Of a stretch of 64,000 nt of DNA, positions 38,993 to 50,295 are shown piece by piece (within the stretch, counting starts at the first letter, position 1; the number at the start of each line of letters is the position of its first letter). The DNA comes from Ministeria vibrans ATCC 50519 (taxonomy: Eukaryota; Protista; Filasterea). Position numbers and translations under genes: made by a program. Location of the stretch: NCBI GenBank assembly GCA_943704425.1, contig CALSCP010001419.1, positions 1 through 64,000 of the forward strand, given 5' to 3'. The notes beneath the pieces are model-generated. The model was not told where the DNA came from and did no database searches. It was given only the letters and a program-made list of their open reading frames with translations.

Positions 38993-39214
38993 CAGACACT
39001 GATTTATATTTTTGATCTTTTATCAACTTGATTAGAAAAGGATTGTTTTATAGTTTATATACACCTGTAAAATAATATGACTAATGTAAACCGAGACTAC
39101 TCTAGAGTTCTATATTGTCCCATTCCCACTTCCAAGCAAATGGTGGTACATTTAGTATTATTGTGGTCACTATAATAATAAAAATATAATAATAATTGTG
39201 TTTGTTTTGTTTGT

Positions 39215-42200
39215 TTATGTGCTCCCTCCTCGCATACGCAGCACAAGCATGACACACCGACTTTTGGCATCGGTACTCCCTTCAACAATACCGTAGACGT
39301 CCAAGGCGACATTCTCCACAAGATGCTTTCCGTTGAAGACTAGACGCTGATCTTTGCAGGGGATGCCTTCCCGGTCAGAGATGAGACTCTGGAGGTGCGC
39401 CACCGTCTTGCCAGGCTCGCAGACGACAGTAATCGTTTTTCCGGTTAGTGTTCGGATGGAAACAGGAAAGCCACCGCGTTGGAGGGCAGCCGCAGCCTGC
39501 CGCTGGCGCTCGGCCTCTTCGTAGGCGAGAGCATCCTCATAGAGGCTCGCCAGACGACGACGATTGGCGCCCGTGGCGGATGTCTGTGCGTAGCTGTGCG
39601 CCAACCAGTGGTCAAACCAGGCAAGGGCGGCGTCGGGCAGCTCACGACGGATGTATCGGTGACTCTGGACGACAACAGTGGCCGTGTCGTGTGGGGCAGG
39701 GCGATCGAAAATGTGCACCAGGATAGCAATGAGACAGGCTTCGCTGCGATGCTGAATGGCCATATCGATCCAACCAACGTTGAGCGACGCATACGACGTG
39801 TTAGCAACACCACGGTCGAGCAGCAGCCGCACCATGTCGGGCGCATCGTTGGCAATGGCCATGTGTATGCAGTGCAAGTAGGCCCACGAGAGTTGGCCAG
39901 GTCCGACCACCTCCTTGTGTACGCGCTCGTACTCGGCTCCGCCTGGTATCTCGCTGAGACGCTCTCGTGTGCCACTCAAACTTGGATCCGAAAGAGCAGC
40001 GTCGTCGAGCTTGAGCGACTGGGCGCCAAACGCAGTGCCACACGAGGCGACGCGATTGTCACGACAGCCTGCATTGATGAGCAGCCGCACTGCCTCTATG
40101 TTGCCCACTTGCGTCGCCAGGAACAGCTCAGTGCGTTGCGTCGCGCTCCCCTCGGCAAAGGTAGTGAGCGACGCATTGGCAGCCGAGGCGGCCTCAACGA
40201 GCGCACGCACCATGGCAGTCGTGCCACGCAGACACGCCAGGTGGGTGAGCCCAAATGCTTCGGGGCGTGAGTCAGCCCAGACGGTCGAGACGGTGACGCC
40301 GTAGCGGGGACGATACGGTGGCTGCGTCTTGCCAAAAAGCTCCTCGGGTGGTGTAGCTCGCACAAGGGCCACAAAGGTCTCTTCGTTGATGGGCGTGTCG
40401 GGTGAAAGCATGTCAAAAAGACGCACAACCGAGTCGGGCACCTCACTGGCGGTAGCGCCCTGAGGCGCGTCAACAAGAGTCGTACTGAATGCTTTGGAGA
40501 GGTGGCGCACGGCGACAGCCAGACATTCAATGCCAACGCCAAGACTGCCACGCTCGAGGACCGTCGGAAGCGCATCCAGAGCAAACTTTCCTAAGGCCTC
40601 GTTAAGACGCTGGAGGTCGGCTGACGCCGCCGGATTGTGCGCGACCGAGTCGTGGTCCTGGACGCCGAGTGAGGCCAAATAGGTGCTCATGCGGATGGTG
40701 TCGCTGACGGAGAGATCGCGCGATTTTTCGCGTAGAATGGTGCGCAGTGCAGCTACAAAGGTCGCCTGGAACTGCTCGGGATGGTCGGTGGACGCGCGAA
40801 GGTGGCGACTTGTGTTCTCGTGCATCCACACGTCGCCATTGAGAGAGCGCTGGACAAAGGCGCAGCGGGCGGCGAGGGTGCAGCACGAATCGACGGATGT
40901 GGTCGACGTCCAGCCAAGGTGCACAAGCACGGCCGTGTAGATGTCGCAGGGAATGCGGCACTGTGCCGGAAAGCACGCGAGTACTTGAAGAAACTTGACG
41001 GTGCGGGTGCGCGAGTGCTGCGACAGCTCCTCGAGTGCTTTTGAGAGCAGGTAGGTGTCGTTGTCTCGGCCATCTTCTCCGTGTGCCTCCTCATCCTCTT
41101 CCGTCGTGGCAAATCCCACGAGCGCTTCGAGAGGGTTGGTCGCGTGAGCACATGTGGCGGCGACCACGGAGAGAAGAAGTAGGTTGTGCTGGGTTCGAGT
41201 GGACACTTGTAGTGCAACGGAAGGGGACAGGTCGCAGGGGCAAGCGGCGCTCAGGAAGGCGGGCGCGAAGGCAGGGTCGACTGTGGCAAAGTCTACAAGG
41301 ATGGGAGTGGGGCGGATGTCGCAAAGGTGGGCAAGGGAGCGCGTCGTGATTAAGAGAACAAGATTTGAGGGCAAGGCAAGGAAGGGAGCAAGCTGGGCGG
41401 CCGAGGAGACGTTGTCAAGGACGACGAGGCGACACAATGACGACAAGGACGAGGTGGAGGTGGAAGAATTAGAAGAAGAAGAGGATGAGGGGCAAGCATA
41501 GCTGGCAAGCGCCTTCTGTAGCGCCTCGGGGGTGGTGAGGTCGGCGACCGATCGGACATCACGGCCCGTGAGAGTGGCAAGTAACTGTTGTGCTTGGGCG
41601 ATTCCGGTTGTATCGCTCAGAGCAAACTCAAGCCACACTGGTGTGTGTGTATTCTCATGATGGTTTGCGTCGATGGAAGATGAGAATCGTTCCAGAAGCC
41701 GTGCAGTGGGTAGATCCGATGTCGAGAGGTCGGAGGCAAAGCGCTCACTGTGCGGTGCAGTGCGGGCGACGAGGCGGGCCAGCAGCGCTGCGGCAGTGCT
41801 CTTGCCCGATCCTCCAGGACCTACAAGGGCGATACAAGAGGCAGTGCTCACGACAAGCGCATTTGCAGCCGCCACGAGCGGACGGTGTTGAAGTAGTAGT
41901 ACAGTAGGAAGGGTCTTGGCGGAGCGTTGAAAGAGCCAATTGGCGCGCGCGCGACCATGTTGCGCCGACTCGTTGATCGATGATAGCTCCAAAATTTCCG
42001 TCCGTAGCAGATCAATGTCGTCTTGGCTTTGAGCTGTCGCTGTGCGACCGTCGCCTTGCGCCATACTGCGAATCCAATCGACAACGAAAACACCACAATC
42101 GTTGCCGGTGGTCTGACGGAGGGAGACAGGCGCCGCGACCAACGGGACGTCACGGCCACTGTACCAGTTGGCGGGCGGTGTGCCCTCGACCGACTCGATG

Positions 42201-43060
42201 ACTGCCGCAAGACCCACAAGAAGCTGTTGAGCCACTTGATGGCATCGGGGTGCACTGGGTGGAGGCAGCGAGTCGAAGAGGACGGCACGCCAGCACTTTG
42301 AGTCGGCAGTGTCGCGACTGACACGCAGCAGCGTCCAATGTTGATTGTCAATGTTGAGAGGAAGCAGCACACTTGTGGTGACGCCGCGCTTGAAGAAGTC
42401 GCGAGTGGCATTCACCTGTGCAGCAAGAGTCAGACCGGGCGCCATGGCTGGGTTGGTGGCGAGCACAGCGACCGTGGCAGGCTCCACAATTGCACAATTT
42501 CGACCTCGCGTTGAAGATGGCACGAAATGCTGCAGGGCCAACACAATCATGTCGTCGGTAAGCCAGACGCTATTGTTCTGACTCGAGGGGGGCTGTGGTG
42601 GGGCATATTCAAGGCTATGGAGACGAGCGGCGCGCGTGGCCATGGCGTCGACACACGATGCCAAGTTCACGTCGCGACTGAGCTGCACAGCACAGCTCAT
42701 GAGGTGTTCGTAGGCGGGATCACAACCAAGAGTATCACGCGAGCAATTGAAGAGAAACAGCAGCGGCAGCGCTTGCGAGCGAGCCAGTCGTGCGGCAAAA
42801 TCCCGTTGGGTCGACGGGTCGGATACAATGAGAATGGCGAGACGAGTCGAGTCGATGATAGATTCGGGTGCCTCTGCCTTGTTTTCAGCAAACGCATTGA
42901 GGTACACACTGAGGCCATGCTGTTCGGTGAGACTTGTGTAGAGGAGCTGGGCAAGGAGTGGGTGGGCGTGGAAGATGGCGCAGTCGTAACGCTTGCGATA
43001 CAGCCGCCCTGAAACAGCCTCAGACGAGGACGATTGCACCGCCGACGTGGGAGTTGACAT
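39215..43060 (-). CDS. NLR/STAND-like protein: TIR-like + Ulp1/C48 protease + NB-ARC-like NTPase + ankyrin repeats + C-terminal ubiquitin domain
   Basis: Intronless, 1281 aa. YDCAIFH...GLSVYL...IIDSTRLAILIVS (TIR-like); WLTDDMI, PLNIDNQHWTLL, FDSL, QTTGNDCGVFV (C48); GPGGSGKST, LVVLDNV, LLITTR (STAND); THLACLRG, LFLATQVGNIEAVRLLINAG, IHMAIANDAPDMVRLLLDRG (ankyrin); TLTGKTI...EGIP..QRLVFNGK...LVLRMRGG (ubiquitin). Confidence 0.88.
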   Translation of the reverse strand: MSTPTSAVQSSSSEAVSGRLYRKRYDCAIFHAHPLLAQLLYTSLTEQHGLSVYLNAFAENKAEAPESIIDSTRLAILIVSDPSTQRDFAARLARSQALPLLFLFNCSRDTLGCDPAYEHLMSCAVQLSRDVNLASCVDAMATRAARLHSLEYAPPQPPSSQNNSVWLTDDMIVLALQHFVPSSTRGRNCAIVEPATVAVLATNPAMAPGLTLAAQVNATRDFFKRGVTTSVLLPLNIDNQHWTLLRVSRDTADSKCWRAVLFDSLPPPSAPRCHQVAQQLLVGLAAVIESVEGTPPANWYSGRDVPLVAAPVSLRQTTGNDCGVFVVDWIRSMAQGDGRTATAQSQDDIDLLRTEILELSSINESAQHGRARANWLFQRSAKTLPTVLLLQHRPLVAAANALVVSTASCIALVGPGGSGKSTAAALLARLVARTAPHSERFASDLSTSDLPTARLLERFSSSIDANHHENTHTPVWLEFALSDTTGIAQAQQLLATLTGRDVRSVADLTTPEALQKALASYACPSSSSSSNSSTSTSSLSSLCRLVVLDNVSSAAQLAPFLALPSNLVLLITTRSLAHLCDIRPTPILVDFATVDPAFAPAFLSAACPCDLSPSVALQVSTRTQHNLLLLSVVAATCAHATNPLEALVGFATTEEDEEAHGEDGRDNDTYLLSKALEELSQHSRTRTVKFLQVLACFPAQCRIPCDIYTAVLVHLGWTSTTSVDSCCTLAARCAFVQRSLNGDVWMHENTSRHLRASTDHPEQFQATFVAALRTILREKSRDLSVSDTIRMSTYLASLGVQDHDSVAHNPAASADLQRLNEALGKFALDALPTVLERGSLGVGIECLAVAVRHLSKAFSTTLVDAPQGATASEVPDSVVRLFDMLSPDTPINEETFVALVRATPPEELFGKTQPPYRPRYGVTVSTVWADSRPEAFGLTHLACLRGTTAMVRALVEAASAANASLTTFAEGSATQRTELFLATQVGNIEAVRLLINAGCRDNRVASCGTAFGAQSLKLDDAALSDPSLSGTRERLSEIPGGAEYERVHKEVVGPGQLSWAYLHCIHMAIANDAPDMVRLLLDRGVANTSYASLNVGWIDMAIQHRSEACLIAILVHIFDRPAPHDTATVVVQSHRYIRRELPDAALAWFDHWLAHSYAQTSATGANRRRLASLYEDALAYEEAERQRQAAAALQRGGFPVSIRTLTGKTITVVCEPGKTVAHLQSLISDREGIPCKDQRLVFNGKHLVENVALDVYGIVEGSTDAKSRCVMLVLRMRGGST

Positions 43061-43153
43061 GAGAAAGTAGTAAGAGGGAAAGTGAACAGAAAATATTAAT
43101 AATTATTATTCTTTTTTTTACTTTACAATCTTAATGACGTTGTTAAAAATTAT

Positions 43154-44321
43154 TCACATTTTTCCGTCGGTCGGACCGACCACGAGCGGGCCGTCGTCGT
43201 CGTCACCTTCACCCTCCTCGAAAAACGCCCATTCGCATGTGTCGCACAAATGCGTGCGTAGCCCATGAGCTCGCCACACTAGCTCGCGTGACTCCCTATC
43301 GTTTCGGAGATCGTCGACCGACGAGAAGAAACGCTAATAAGGTGGAAAATCAATATTATCTCTTTCAACAATAATGATACAAATTTTTTTTAAAAAAAAA
43401 AATAAGTTAATATGTATAGGTACCTGAAGGGCCTGCACCAAAAAGTTATTGCCGGGCTCGACAAGATCGACAAAAAAGTCGGCGGGCACTTCGCGAATCT
43501 GATGGGAGAGCACATCGACAAAGTCGACAAAGAGATCGCGATGGAGTTGAAGCGCACGCTCACTGAAGCAGAGAAGACGCACCAGACGCTTCCATTGTTC
43601 AAACGCCGTCAGAGAATGTCCGAGCAAGAAGCACAGATAGGCGTATTCGAGTTCGCCAAGAATCTCCATGGCATCTACACATCCAAAACCACATTATTAG
43701 TGCTCTTCGCACAACTTTTCTTTTTAAGCGTGTGCCTGTCATTGATTGGAGCATGATGCCGAGCGAATACGAGTGATCTAGGCTGTGCCGGGTGATTTCG
43801 GCGGGAGTGGCACCCGGCGGGTAGCATGGCGATGGAAACGGCGTGAAGCGCAGAGCTTGGTCGTCGCTCGGATTGATCTTGCCGTCGGTAGGCTCAAGCC
43901 GACGCCACAGCGACTCAGTAATGTGGCCTGAAAGCGAAACCCAGCGCGCGAGCTCCCCGCCGTGTGGGTAGGGGCCCAGGAAGGGATCAAGGCCGCGGTG
44001 GTCGTCGCGACAGCGTTGGATTTCGTCGACGTCTTGTGAACGTTCCACATCCTCAGTCTGCGCGTCCCAGCGTAGCACCACCGTCTCGGCGGGCGACATC
44101 CACAGGAACATTCCGGTGCGGGGTCCCTGGCCGCGTCCCTCCTTGCCAACGGGCGCCCAGTGCACAAAATGCAAATGTTTCGGAAGAAACTTGACACCTC
44201 GAAAGCGCTCGCCGACCGTCCACGAGTTCATGTCGACGCCAACCTGGGTGCCTGGTGGCACATTGAGCACAACAATGCGGCCGCCAATCTCGAACCATCG
44301 TTGCGCCTCCTCCTGGTTCAT
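43154..44321 (-). CDS. AAR2: U5 snRNP assembly factor AAR2
   Basis: NVPPGTQVGVDMNSWTVGERFRGVKFLP..HFVH, LDPFLGPYP, EITRHSLDHSY, ILGELEYAYLCFLLGHS..AFEQWK. Confidence 0.93.
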
Positions 44322-44396
44322 CTCATAAAATGTCTGATCACCGATCACTGATGAGTGAAACGTTATAATTTGCGTTATTCAATCATTCTACTCAAC

Positions 44397-48467: not shown

Positions 48468-49186
48468 ATGGATCCGACGGCTCGCTTCCAAGCGCTGTAT
48501 GACCTTGGAACGGATGTCACCATTAACCCCTGCCTGAAGCTGCACATGTATTACAAATCGGCTGCCAACCTGTTCGTTCAGGTGAGAGAAATGAGTCAGA
48601 TATATATCATTTATTTTGAATTTTGATGGAGGGGAAAACACCGACTCACGACACTCTGTTGATCCGCACACGTCCGCACAGGCACATACATACGACGGCG
48701 AAGGGCAGGATGAGCGTGCCTTTGTGCTCTTTGTGAAATACATTACGTCCGAAGAACGAGAAGAAGCCACTCAGTGCTCAACCTTCCACTTCCTTCTCTT
48801 CTGTAGACTTGTCCTGCGCAAAATCCCAACGCATCCCGACTTTAAGACGTCGACATTGAAGCAGGAACATGCTGCGGCACAGGGTAGCAAGTGCAAGGAG
48901 GCGCTGCGCAAGGCTGAATCGTTGAAGGCACTCATCAAGGCGAAGTACCAGGCTGAATGGGACGACGCTCTTGAGGCTGCAAGGCTGAAGGAGAACGAGG
49001 AGCAGGAGGCGAGAGAACAGACAGAACGCGACGAGGCGGAAGAGAGGATACGGAAGCAACAGCCGAACGGGGGCGAATGTGTGGAGGCACAAAGAGACGA
49101 CACTGAGGATCCGTTTGGCGCGCTCTATGAGCGAACTCCTGTGCCCATCACACCCGCCATCCCCACCAGTACCACCACCACCACCG

Positions 49187-49221
<35 letters not shown>

Positions 49222-49909
49222 GCCACTACTCCGACTGCTCCCACCTCTACCAGCAACACACCTCCATCGCCCGTTCTCAGTGCTCCCCCACTGCGCCACA
49301 TGGTCCTTCCAGCCTCCCTCCCCGACACCTTCCGCACCTTGGCGACCGAGAGCACCGCAGCCAACCGCGAGACGTGTGGGCTGCTCTGCGGCACTCTTCA
49401 CCACGACGTGCTTGTTGTTACAACACTGCTGCTTCCCCGCCAGACGGGCGCGAGCGACTCATGCGAGATGATGGACGAAGACGCTATCTTCTTGTACCAA
49501 GACGAGAATGAGCTCATGACACTCGGATGGATACACGTAAGACCAAAACTACAACTCAACTCCTTCCCCTCTGCTTCTCAGCGGAAAGCACAGTACTCAC
49601 AGAGAGAAACATGCACTTTTGTGTACATAGACACACCCTACGCAAACGGCATTCCTCTCGAGCGTCGACCTGCACACGCACGCATCGTACCAGCTCATGT
49701 TGGGCGAGGCTGTCGCTGTCGTTGTCGCTCCGTCCTACCGCACCACTGGTACATTTGCTCTCACCCTTCCGCATGGTCTGCGCACCGTTGTCGACTGTCG
49801 CCAGCCTGGCTTTCATCCCCACGCCAATGCCGACTCGCTCTTCGAAGAAGTGTCTTCGCGTGTGACGTACGATCCAGAGCGCCCTCTGAAAATCCACGAC
49901 ATGAGATGA
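48468..49909 (+). CDS. STAMBP: AMSH/STAMBP JAMM deubiquitinase with N-terminal USP8-dimer/MIT-like domain
   Basis: [11 protein letters not shown]...IPTHPDF; [10 protein letters not shown]; LMTLGWIH|[30 protein letters not shown]; GFHPH. Confidence 0.93.
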
Positions 49910-50295
49910 ATTGCATAATATTTTGAGTCTTTTTGTGTATTAACCAGTCGTCTCTTACATCTCAACGAGTAAACCTTTCATTTCCTTATTAATTCTCTAT
50001 TAAACTTCAAATTATTTAGTGTCACAGTTCTGTGTGTCACTCACAGTCTCACAGTCGTGTTGTGATGATGATTGCTTTCCCTCGCCCTACTAGTTAGGAG
50101 TCACTGGATCTCTCATGTGAGTCAGGTCACGACGTGGGTGCGCTTTATCTTTCTTCACGTCGACACCGGACACCAAAATTTGATCGCGTGTGTGACGATC
50201 GATTGACTTATGCCAACTCTGGCAACTCAACACTAAATCAAATTGAACGAACATTTGTCATTTTTTTTTTCGTTCGTTCACGCAGGATCTTCAGT

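What the first reader, a model, noticed from the sequence alone, without database searches (positions are those of the whole stretch)
39215..39475. C-terminal ubiquitin ends LRMRGG-ST: a masked, potentially conjugatable tail
Seen by alignment to ubiquitin: L8, V70, R72, R74 and G75-G76 are kept, I44 becomes V, only K11 and K48 of the seven lysines remain, about 6 residues are inserted before the last strand, and just two residues (ST) follow the di-Gly. Known: Ubl precursors carry short caps removed by proteases, and R72 favours the ubiquitin E1 over the NEDD8 E1. Inference: removing ST, possibly by the in-cis protease, would expose a free GG so the whole receptor could be ligated to targets, conceptually like bacterial CBASS cyclase conjugation.
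Basis: partly seen in the sequence, partly recalled or inferred. Interest (0 to 1): 0.85.

Follow-up and report, generated by a model that had tools for sequence, protein, structure and literature searches.

The report
Capped ubiquitin tail on NLR-like protein
A 1281-residue immune-receptor-like protein of a marine protist ends in a real ubiquitin domain whose Gly-Gly end sits under a short, variable cap in all ten relatives found, so the whole protein may be clipped and then attached to other proteins like ubiquitin, though nobody has tested this.

Summary
Window 39215-39475 (-) encodes the last 86 residues of an unspliced 1281-aa ORF (39215-43060). They form a true ubiquitin domain (Pfam 7e-12; ubiquitin chains in PDB 6e-15).

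I found nine further lineages, one of them a choanoflagellate. All end in GG plus 1-8 unconserved residues, none starting with Pro, and position 72 is Arg in 9 of 10.

A second GG, a polyubiquitin relic directly before the domain, has decayed in four of nine readable lineages. Three other ubiquitin domains embedded in proteins of this genome lack GG. Its NEDD8 ends ALRGG-C.

The in-cis C48 protease keeps its triad, oxyanion Gln and both Gly-Gly tunnel Trp residues. However, one relative has a different N-terminal domain, so self-processing is not obligatory.

Best reading (0.45): a precursor-type ubiquitin-like tail that is clipped and then conjugated, carrying the receptor with it. Clipping, E1 charging and conjugation are inferred, not shown.

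I found no description of this architecture in the papers searched. The scan had noted it only on this same window, not on other DNA.

The parts
39215..43060 (-). Whole ORF, 1281 aa plus TAA stop. Order: N-terminal TIR-like region, C48 protease, NB-ARC-type P-loop ATPase, helical region, Ank-like module, long helix, ubiquitin domain, 2-residue cap.
   Evidence: It is single-copy in the 29.7-Mb genome. Probable RNA contigs cover 39090-43082 with no joints.
42600..43003 (-). N-terminal TIR-like region.
   Evidence: Ours has no Pfam hit here. The relative P0013 has Pfam TIR_2 (2.4e-7) in the same position before its C48 domain.
41999..42571 (-). Ulp1/SENP-type C48 (CE clan) cysteine protease. Key residues: W166 (WLTDD), H241-W242, D263, Q316, C322.
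   Evidence: Pfam PF02902 27.5 bits against a cut-off of 20.7. Residues are conserved in alignments A1 and A2. The A2 profile hits XopD, SENP5, NopD, OtDUB, Ulp1 and SENP8 in PDB. Coordinates.
41141..41878 (-). P-loop STAND (NB-ARC-type) ATPase. Walker A GPGGSGKS at 41798-41821, Walker B LVVLDNV at 41408-41428, TTR motif at 41336-41353.
   Evidence: Ours gives only weak Pfam P-loop hits. The homologous region of P0001, P0003 and P0027 hits PF00931 above its cut-off. Alignments.
39701..40291 (-). Conserved Ank-like module, the best-conserved part of the family apart from ubiquitin.
   Evidence: Pfam Ank_2 and Ank. Alignment A3 has 49% mean column identity. pLDDT is 85-94 in the P0037 model.
39476..39700 (-). 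Helical linker that ends at the hinge ...QRGG. The R of RGG is 39476-39478.
   Evidence: Helices. Alignment.
39470..39475 (-). Upstream GG directly before ubiquitin position 1. It is a polyubiquitin-junction relic and a probable hinge.
   Evidence: Kept in 5 of the 9 lineages readable there and lost in P0037, P0008, L020 and P0027. The same relic is described and shown unprocessed in Toxoplasma PUBL.
39224..39469 (-). Ubiquitin fold, residues 1198-1279, ending LRMRGG. K11 is at 39437-39439, K48 at 39326-39328 and the 6-aa insert at 39254-39271.
39218..39223 (-). Two-residue cap (Ser-Thr) after Gly76.
   Evidence: Caps in relatives are YK, VEIEKERV, SDY, NIRFISY, IQFKN, C, ASI, H and HSYV.
39215..39217 (-). 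TAA stop codon, followed by an A/T-rich 3' UTR down to about 39090.

Best explanation
The C-terminal domain is a ubiquitin captured from a polyubiquitin gene. It has been kept in precursor form, with a free and flexible LRxxGG tail masked by a short disposable cap.

A Gly-Gly-specific protease removes the cap. In most family members the plausible candidate is the protein's own C48 domain, acting in cis or on a neighbour after NB-ARC-driven oligomerisation. A cellular deubiquitinase is the alternative.

The exposed Gly76 carboxylate is then activated by a ubiquitin-type E1, since Arg72 is kept, and ligated to lysines. The whole receptor-like protein thus becomes covalently attached to targets, to itself or to sister protomers.

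Shown here: the fold, the tail, its conservation and the intact protease residues. Inferred: cleavage, E1 charging and conjugation.
For: 1. GG is invariant in 10 of 10 lineages, whose Ub domains are on average only 43% identical over the eight aligned. G75 and G76 are 2 of 12 invariant columns.
2. The Ub domain is always at the extreme C-terminus. It is followed by 1-8 residues with no conservation of length or sequence and never Pro at P1'. This is the pattern of Ub, NEDD8 and SUMO precursors (established knowledge).
3. Internal controls point the same way. The upstream GG relic, of the same origin, has decayed in 4 of 9 lineages. The three embedded Ub domains of this genome that could be read to their end lack GG (LRVNS, LRLRGE and one without a recognisable tail), whereas its NEDD8 ends ALRGG-C.
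4. Position 72 is Arg in 9 of 10 and Lys in one.
5. The C48 domain keeps His, Asp, Cys, the oxyanion Gln and both tunnel Trp residues. It is present in 6 of the 7 lineages whose N-terminus is known, including a short form, C48-Ank-Ub, that lacks NB-ARC (P0037/L019).
6. The tail is predicted free: pLDDT is below 50 for the last 9 residues, next to a confident Ub fold.
7. There is precedent that N-terminally extended ubiquitin works. Toxoplasma PUBL has 311 aa, an unprocessed RGG relic and an essential terminal GG.
8. The gene appears transcribed and unspliced.
Against: - There is no biochemical evidence of any kind.
- A conjugated modifier of about 140 kDa has no precedent, and E1/E2 access to such a protein may be sterically limited.
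- P0027 keeps Ub-GG-cap without a C48 domain, so the cis-protease link is not obligatory.
- The C48 profile matches SUMO-, NEDD8- and ubiquitin-directed CE proteases about equally, so its substrate cannot be assigned.
- The AF2 model gave no usable picture of C48 docking onto Ub, because the C48 part had pLDDT 30-70.
- The sample is only 10 lineages. The contrast of 10/10 against 5/9 GG retention is suggestive, not statistically strong.
Confidence: 0.45

Rival explanations
1. In-cis regulatory ligand. The Ub tail docks in the Gly-Gly tunnel of the protein's own, or a neighbour's, C48 domain as a substrate or product mimic. This holds the protease or the receptor in an off or on state, or drives head-to-tail assembly. 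GG is conserved for that binding and nothing is ever conjugated.
For: C48 and Ub co-occur in 6 of 7 lineages with a known N-terminus, including the short C48-Ank-Ub form. The tunnel Trp residues and the triad are intact. UBL domains that regulate a deubiquitinase in cis are established for USP4, USP7 and USP14 (general knowledge).
Against: Known regulatory UBLs have lost GG. A true scissile bond with non-Pro P1' in all members would be cut rather than merely bound. P0027 keeps Ub-GG-cap without C48. Arg72 conservation is not explained.
Confidence: 0.2
2. Integrated decoy or tripwire. The capped ubiquitin is bait for pathogen enzymes that act on ubiquitin, such as viral or bacterial deubiquitinases or ubiquitin-modifying effectors. 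Their action on the tail activates the NLR-like switch.
For: The NB-ARC architecture carries swappable N-terminal effector-type domains, namely C48, TIR and another. Plant NLRs carry integrated domains, including ULP1 in soybean Rpp1. This genome is reported to hold many protease-NB-ARC proteins (unchecked notes).
Against: The gene is single-copy, with no sign of diversification in this genome. The short form lacks the NB-ARC switch. A bait would be expected to mimic ubiquitin closely, yet ours is only about 47% identical to it.
Confidence: 0.12
3. Carrier of a releasable small modifier. Cleavage happens at both GG sites, ...RGG|F before the domain and GG|ST after it. This frees an ~82-residue ubiquitin-like protein, perhaps only on receptor activation.
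For: A GG followed by an aromatic residue directly precedes the domain in 5 lineages, with a hydrophobic residue five positions upstream. Some CE-clan proteases, such as adenain, cut linear xGG|x sites (general knowledge).
Against: The upstream GG is lost in 4 of 9 lineages. There is no ubiquitin fold upstream for a Ulp- or DUB-type enzyme to grip. The same relic is not processed in PUBL.
Confidence: 0.08
4. Plain ubiquitin-like interaction or degron domain, for proteasome or shuttle binding or as a K48 chain acceptor. On this view its GG and cap are leftovers of capture from a polyubiquitin gene.
For: K48 is kept in 9 of 10 lineages, Asn in L021. G47 and the EGI loop are invariant in the eight aligned. 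Ubiquitin-fusion-degradation signals are known (general knowledge).
Against: GG is retained 10 of 10 despite about 43% mean identity. The position is invariably terminal. The sister relic GG has decayed, and the other embedded Ub domains read to their end in this genome have lost GG.
Confidence: 0.1

Closest known systems
Toxoplasma gondii PUBL, plastid ubiquitin-like protein (PMC5487736)
   Same: A ubiquitin-derived domain sits at the C-terminus of a larger protein. An RGG relic lies directly before the domain. PUBL's terminal GG is essential while its upstream RGG is unprocessed and dispensable.
   Different: PUBL has 311 aa, and its extension is a plastid-targeting leader. It has no protease, ATPase or repeat domains. 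It belongs to the apicoplast ERAD-like import machinery.
Ubiquitin, NEDD8 and SUMO precursors with their processing proteases (Ulp1/SENP, SENP8/DEN1, UCHs)
   Same: GG is followed by a short, variable C-terminal extension that a Gly-Gly-specific cysteine protease removes. This genome's own NEDD8 ends ALRGG-C. The C48 domain shares the family's catalytic and tunnel residues.
   Different: Here precursor and protease lie in one 1281-aa polypeptide with an NB-ARC ATPase between them. The modifier would carry an N-terminal extension of about 1200 residues.
Bacterial CBASS CD-NTase conjugation (Cap2 E1-E2, Cap3 JAB)
   Same: Conceptually the same: an immune protein is itself the thing conjugated, through its C-terminus.
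   Different: The CD-NTase has no ubiquitin fold. The system needs a Cap2 E1-E2 fusion and a Cap3 JAB protease encoded in the same operon. No CD-NTase, E1 or E2 domain was detected in this protein or in the seven neighbouring ORFs scanned. The protease here is CE clan, not JAB.
Tetrahymena BUBL/BIL2 'single-ubiquitin-dispensing platform' (PMC8616854)
   Same: A ubiquitin-like domain lies in one polypeptide with an autoprocessing domain. The peptide bond after the Ubl powers one round of ATP- and E1-independent isopeptide formation.
   Different: The processing domain there is intein-like (BIL), not a C48 protease. It follows the Ubl directly, and the locus is polyubiquitin-like rather than a STAND protein.
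Soybean Rpp1 ULP1-NBS-LRR, and NLRs with integrated domains (PMC9528084)
   Same: A Ulp1-type protease domain is fused to an NB-ARC immune receptor.
   Different: Rpp1 has LRRs and no C-terminal ubiquitin. It is a plant lineage, with no sign of shared descent with this family.
UBL domains of deubiquitinases (USP4, USP7, USP14)
   Same: A ubiquitin-fold domain lies in cis with a ubiquitin-directed cysteine protease.
   Different: Those UBLs lack a terminal GG, are not at the extreme C-terminus under a cap, and are not conjugated (general knowledge).

Membership tests
Ubiquitin family (PF00240, beta-grasp) | Sequence match to the family profile above the curated cut-off, over the whole fold | tested here: met
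   45.3 bits against 25.4. It aligns to ubiquitin 1-76 in PDB chains at about 6e-15. beta-beta-alpha-beta-beta secondary structure in the models.
Conjugatable (type I) ubiquitin-like modifiers | C-terminal Gly-Gly (or Gly) at the end of the fold | tested here: met
   LRMRGG in ours. GG is present in 10 of 10 lineages.
Conjugatable (type I) ubiquitin-like modifiers | Made as a precursor with a short C-terminal extension that is removed | tested here: inconclusive
   The extension is present and variable, 1-8 aa, never Pro at P1'. Removal cannot be tested with sequence tools.
Conjugatable (type I) ubiquitin-like modifiers | Adenylation and thioester formation by an E1, then isopeptide linkage to substrates | not testable with these tools
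   Only indirect evidence: Arg72 is kept in 9 of 10 lineages, whereas this genome's NEDD8 has Ala72.
Conjugatable (type I) ubiquitin-like modifiers | Small free-standing protein, or N-terminal unit of a cleaved fusion | tested here: not met
   The domain is the C-terminus of a 1281-aa multidomain protein.
Peptidase C48 (Ulp1/SENP, CE clan) | His-Asp-Cys triad, oxyanion Gln, and two Trp residues forming the Gly-Gly tunnel | tested here: met
   H241, D263, C322, Q316, W166 and W242. His, Asp, Cys and the His-adjacent Trp are invariant in alignment A2. Pfam 27.5 bits against 20.7. The residue roles come from established Ulp1/SENP structures.
Peptidase C48 (Ulp1/SENP, CE clan) | Defined substrate (SUMO, NEDD8 or ubiquitin) | tested here: inconclusive
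   Profile hits are XopD 1.6e-6, SENP5 2e-6, OtDUB 4.5e-5, Ulp1 1e-3 and SENP8 2.5e-3. No single specificity class stands out.
NB-ARC / STAND (NLR-like) ATPases | Walker A, Walker B and the NB-ARC profile | tested here: inconclusive
   Ours has the Walker A, Walker B and TTR motifs but only sub-threshold Pfam P-loop hits. The aligned regions of P0001 (38.3 bits), P0003 (27.2) and P0027 (30.5) pass the PF00931 cut-off of 23.5.
CBASS Cap2/Cap3 conjugation system | CD-NTase substrate, E1-E2 fusion (Cap2) and JAB protease (Cap3) encoded together | tested here: not met
   No CD-NTase, E1 or E2 domain in the protein or in the seven neighbouring ORFs scanned. The neighbours are AAR2, eIF2D and an AMSH-like JAB protein 5.5 kb away that looks like a housekeeping gene.

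The most novel reading that the evidence does not exclude
The cap is not only a mask but also the energy source. The in-cis C48 cysteine attacks the Gly76-cap bond and forms an intramolecular thioester. It then passes Gly76 directly to a lysine instead of to water. This would give one E1- and ATP-independent round of self-conjugation on receptor activation.

The acceptor could be, for example, K48, kept in 9 of 10 lineages, on a neighbouring protomer's Ub domain. That would give covalent K48-G76 chains of whole receptors. In principle it parallels the Tetrahymena BIL2 ubiquitin-dispensing platform.
Probability: 0.06. Interest if true: 0.95.

Novelty: new variant of a known kind. Interest (0 to 1): 0.72.

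Why it matters
If the tail is clipped and used, this would be a eukaryotic immune-receptor-like STAND protein that acts as its own ubiquitin-like modifier. The closest parallels are the covalent conjugation recently found in bacterial defence (CBASS cGAS conjugation and Bil-type systems).

The family is rare but spans deeply diverged marine protists and a choanoflagellate transcriptome. It therefore bears on how ubiquitin-type chemistry and NLR-type switches were combined before animals arose.

It also gives enzymologists a natural ubiquitin with an N-terminal extension of about 1200 residues, and a protease, substrate and switch in one chain. The prediction is directly testable with two point mutants, one in GG and one in C322.

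Tried and rejected
- My first guess of a trypanosomatid genome was dropped. Other notes and my own look at the canonical ubiquitin genes show introns.
- A guess of a Nannochloropsis-like alga was dropped, because no light-harvesting-protein gene was found (weak negative).
- The single-sequence AF2 model of the last 161 residues was poor, mean pLDDT 54.
- The AF2 model of P0037 with a 9-row alignment gave a confident Ank-Ub part but a poor C48 part.
- Word-indexed protein searches with P0002 (region 60-335) and P0001 (region 40-1035) found only the queries themselves.
- The viral contig scan found no relative. The metagenome scan gave one new locus, L020.
- No paralogue exists in the genome.
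- The seven neighbouring ORFs scanned hold no E1 or E2 domain.
- Paper searches for this architecture found nothing on it. They returned only plant ULP1-NLRs and general STAND surveys.
- Spliced gene models (L005, L021 and the canonical ubiquitin genes) were read exon by exon.
- In L021 the last strand and GG-H stop lie in a different frame from the rest of the Ub exon. I left this as it is and count that lineage with this caveat.
Full report
**What is there**

Window 39215-39475 on the minus strand translates to 86 residues followed by a TAA stop. These are the end of a single open reading frame, 39215-43060 (-), of 1281 residues.

Pfam finds the following in this protein:
- a Ulp1-type C48 protease, residues 231-354
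- a P-loop, GPGGSGKS
- ankyrin repeats
- a ubiquitin domain, residues 1201-1263 (E 7.2e-12)

Against solved structures the last 86 residues align end to end with ubiquitin at about 6e-15 for monoubiquitin chains.
- L8, V70, R72, R74 and G75-G76 are kept.
- I44 is replaced by V.
- Only K11 and K48 of the seven lysines remain.
- Six residues are inserted before the last strand.
- Two residues, Ser-Thr, follow the di-glycine.

Identity to ubiquitin is 36 of 76 positions, by my hand count.

**Is the gene model sound?**

The genome has 29.7 Mb in 2860 contigs, and the gene is single-copy. Contigs of a run that is probably RNA lie at 39090-40141 and 40143-43082. There are no joints, and the neighbouring contigs stop at the gene's borders. 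A poly-T loose end at 43094 marks the poly(A) site of the upstream gene.

Two contigs of a poly(A) marine metatranscriptome also lie inside the ORF. The ORF, including the stop after Ser-Thr, is therefore very probably the real unspliced message. The strain differences seen do not touch the ubiquitin domain.

**Relatives**

The family is rare.
- A word-indexed search found one full-length relative, from the choanoflagellate Didymoeca costata (EukProt; P0001 and P0038). It is 30% identical over 90% of the protein.
- An exhaustive HMMER scan of 1.84 billion representatives used residues 160-1195, with the ubiquitin domain left out on purpose. It gave seven hits below 1e-10, plus weaker ones.
- Contig look-ups and one metagenome scan added DNA context.

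The lineages and their domain orders are:

| Lineage | Domain order or state |
|---|---|
| ours | TIR-like, C48, NB-ARC, Ank, Ub |
| P0001 (Didymoeca) | C48, NB-ARC, Ank, Ub |
| P0003 / L004 | C48, TIR, NB-ARC, Ank, Ub |
| L005 / P0002 | same as P0003, split by introns |
| P0037 / L019 | complete ORF with an in-frame stop upstream: C48, helices, Ank, Ub, no NB-ARC |
| P0005 | C-terminal fragment |
| P0008 | C-terminal fragment |
| L020 | C-terminal part; completes P0004 |
| L021 | intron-rich locus with C48, NB-ARC, Ank and Ub exons |
| P0027 | distant member: NB-ARC, the C-terminal module and Ub, but a different N-terminal domain with no Pfam match |

I read spliced loci exon by exon and did not join exons.

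All ten lineages end in GG followed by a short cap. The caps are ST, YK, VEIEKERV, SDY, NIRFISY, IQFKN, C, ASI, H and HSYV. In L021 the last strand and GG-H stop sit in another frame than the rest of the exon. That is either an assembly error or decay. I left it as found.

The caps share neither length nor sequence, and none begins with proline, which would block Gly-Gly-directed proteases.

In an alignment of eight of the domains, mean pairwise identity is 43% and only 12 columns are invariant: T7, G10, E34, G35, I36, Q41, G47, K48, L56, V70, G75 and G76. Over all ten lineages, position 72 is Arg in nine and Lys in one. Positions 73 and 74 vary.

**Controls**

1. A second GG lies directly before ubiquitin position 1: QRGG|F in ours, SRGG|Y, RNGG|F, DSGG|W and ASGG|F in others. 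This is the junction of a polyubiquitin gene, so the domain was captured from one. The relic is lost in P0037, P0008, L020 and P0027. Of two GG motifs with the same origin, only the terminal one is invariant.
2. Within this genome, three other ubiquitin-derived domains embedded in larger proteins were read to their end, and none has GG. One ends LRVNS, at the N-terminus of a P-loop protein. One ends LRLRGE, inside a 1649-residue open frame with no stop. The third has no recognisable tail. The NEDD8 gene, by contrast, ends ALRGG-C.

So the tail groups with the conjugatable class, not with embedded ubiquitin-like domains. With ten lineages this is suggestive rather than statistically strong.

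**The protease**

The C48 domain keeps the catalytic His, Asp and Cys (H241, D263, C322) and the oxyanion Gln (Q316). It also keeps both tryptophans that clamp the Gly-Gly in Ulp1/SENP structures: W166 in a WLxD motif, and W242 next to the catalytic His. The roles of these residues come from established Ulp1/SENP structures.

A profile of five family members matches these CE-clan proteases:

| PDB match | E-value |
|---|---|
| XopD | 1.6e-6 |
| SENP5 | 2e-6 |
| NopD | 2.2e-5 |
| OtDUB | 4.5e-5 |
| Ulp1 | 1e-3 |
| SENP8 | 2.5e-3 |

Membership in the CE clan is clear, but the substrate class is not.

The domain is present in six of the seven lineages whose N-terminus is known, including the short form without NB-ARC. 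P0027 shows that Ub-GG-cap can persist without it. Self-processing is therefore plausible but not required, and ordinary cellular deubiquitinases could trim the cap.

**Structure**

An AF2 model of P0037 built on the family alignment gives the Ank-like module, a long helix and the ubiquitin fold at pLDDT 85-94. The last nine residues fall below 50, which indicates a free tail. The C48 part is poorly modelled. The model does not show whether the tail reaches the protease.

**How it most likely works**

I commit to the precursor reading at 0.45. The cap is removed. The exposed Gly76 is activated by a ubiquitin-type E1, and the whole protein is ligated to lysines of targets, of itself or of sister protomers. 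The NB-ARC switch may control when this happens.

Two points make this physically reasonable. N-terminally extended ubiquitin is known to be conjugation-competent (general knowledge). Toxoplasma PUBL is a natural case with the same unprocessed RGG relic and an essential terminal GG.

The steps of cleavage, charging and ligation are all inferred.

The rivals are:
- a non-conjugated in-cis ligand of the C48 domain (0.20)
- an integrated bait for pathogen enzymes that act on ubiquitin (0.12)
- a plain interaction or degron domain (0.10)
- a releasable small modifier cut at both GG sites (0.08)

The most novel reading not excluded is E1-independent transpeptidation by the cis protease, with the cap bond as the energy source. 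It is analogous to the Tetrahymena BIL2 platform.

**Comparison with what is known**

The parts are all known kinds. The combination is a Gly-Gly protease and a capped ubiquitin at opposite ends of an NLR-like ATPase, conserved across distant protists. I did not find it described in five full-text searches. Plant ULP1-NBS-LRR proteins such as soybean Rpp1 lack the ubiquitin.

CBASS is a functional analogy only. Its defining parts were not detected in this protein or in the seven neighbouring ORFs scanned.

**Earlier notes**

The scan had noted this ORF only on this same window. Other unchecked notes report many protease-NB-ARC proteins in this genome.

The stretch given to read laying was 4501 letters.

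Noticed in passing
window 39470-39478 (-): The residues ...QRGG directly abut ubiquitin position 1, like the junction between units of polyubiquitin. This suggests the domain was captured from a polyubiquitin gene. The relic is kept in 5 of 9 readable lineages, and Toxoplasma PUBL has the same feature.
   Followed up: yes
window 48616-49923 (+): An ORF with USP8_dimer (MIT-like) and JAB/MPN domains, an AMSH-like deubiquitinase, lies about 5.5 kb upstream of the receptor gene. It is probably a housekeeping gene and the proximity is probably chance.
   Followed up: partly
window 43094 and 43082: A poly-T loose end at 43094 marks the poly(A) site of the upstream minus-strand AAR2 gene (43599-44348). 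The transcript contig of the receptor gene starts at 43082. The two genes are thus about 12 nt apart, and the 5' UTR is about 22 nt.
   Followed up: partly
L009 (= G000:C986:41283-41495, -) and L007 (= G000:C2215:6831-7040, -): Two other ubiquitin-derived domains sit inside large proteins of this genome. One is internal to a 1649-residue open frame and ends LRLRGE. The other is the N-terminus of a P-loop protein and ends LRVNS. Both lack GG.
   Followed up: partly
L011, L013, L015-L018 (G000:C615, C1674, C2364): The canonical ubiquitin genes of this genome are split by introns after Gln31 and after Glu64. The receptor's ubiquitin domain has no intron.
   Followed up: no
P0027, residues 1-360: This distant family member has a non-C48 N-terminal domain with no Pfam hit. 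It carries a His-Gly ... Cys pattern (SHGDG, ALCNG) reminiscent of caspase-fold proteases. Not tested.
   Followed up: no
L019:105-1880 (+) (P0037): A complete short family member, C48-helices-Ank-Ub of 591 aa, with an in-frame stop upstream and no NB-ARC. It shows that protease, Ank module and capped ubiquitin can stand without the ATPase.
   Followed up: partly
L021:4331-4400 (+): In this intron-rich relative the last ubiquitin strand and ...RMVGG-H stop are in a different frame from the rest of the Ub exon. This is either an assembly error or a decaying copy. K48 is Asn here.
   Followed up: partly
P0013 (TIR_2 at 52-153, C48 at 315-404): A fragment of a relative has a Pfam-significant TIR before its C48 domain, the same order as in the window protein.
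   Followed up: partly
window 39169-39221: The A/T-rich low-complexity 3' UTR starts directly after the stop. The reads tool masks it as a repeat, which makes contigs appear to break at 39222.
   Followed up: no
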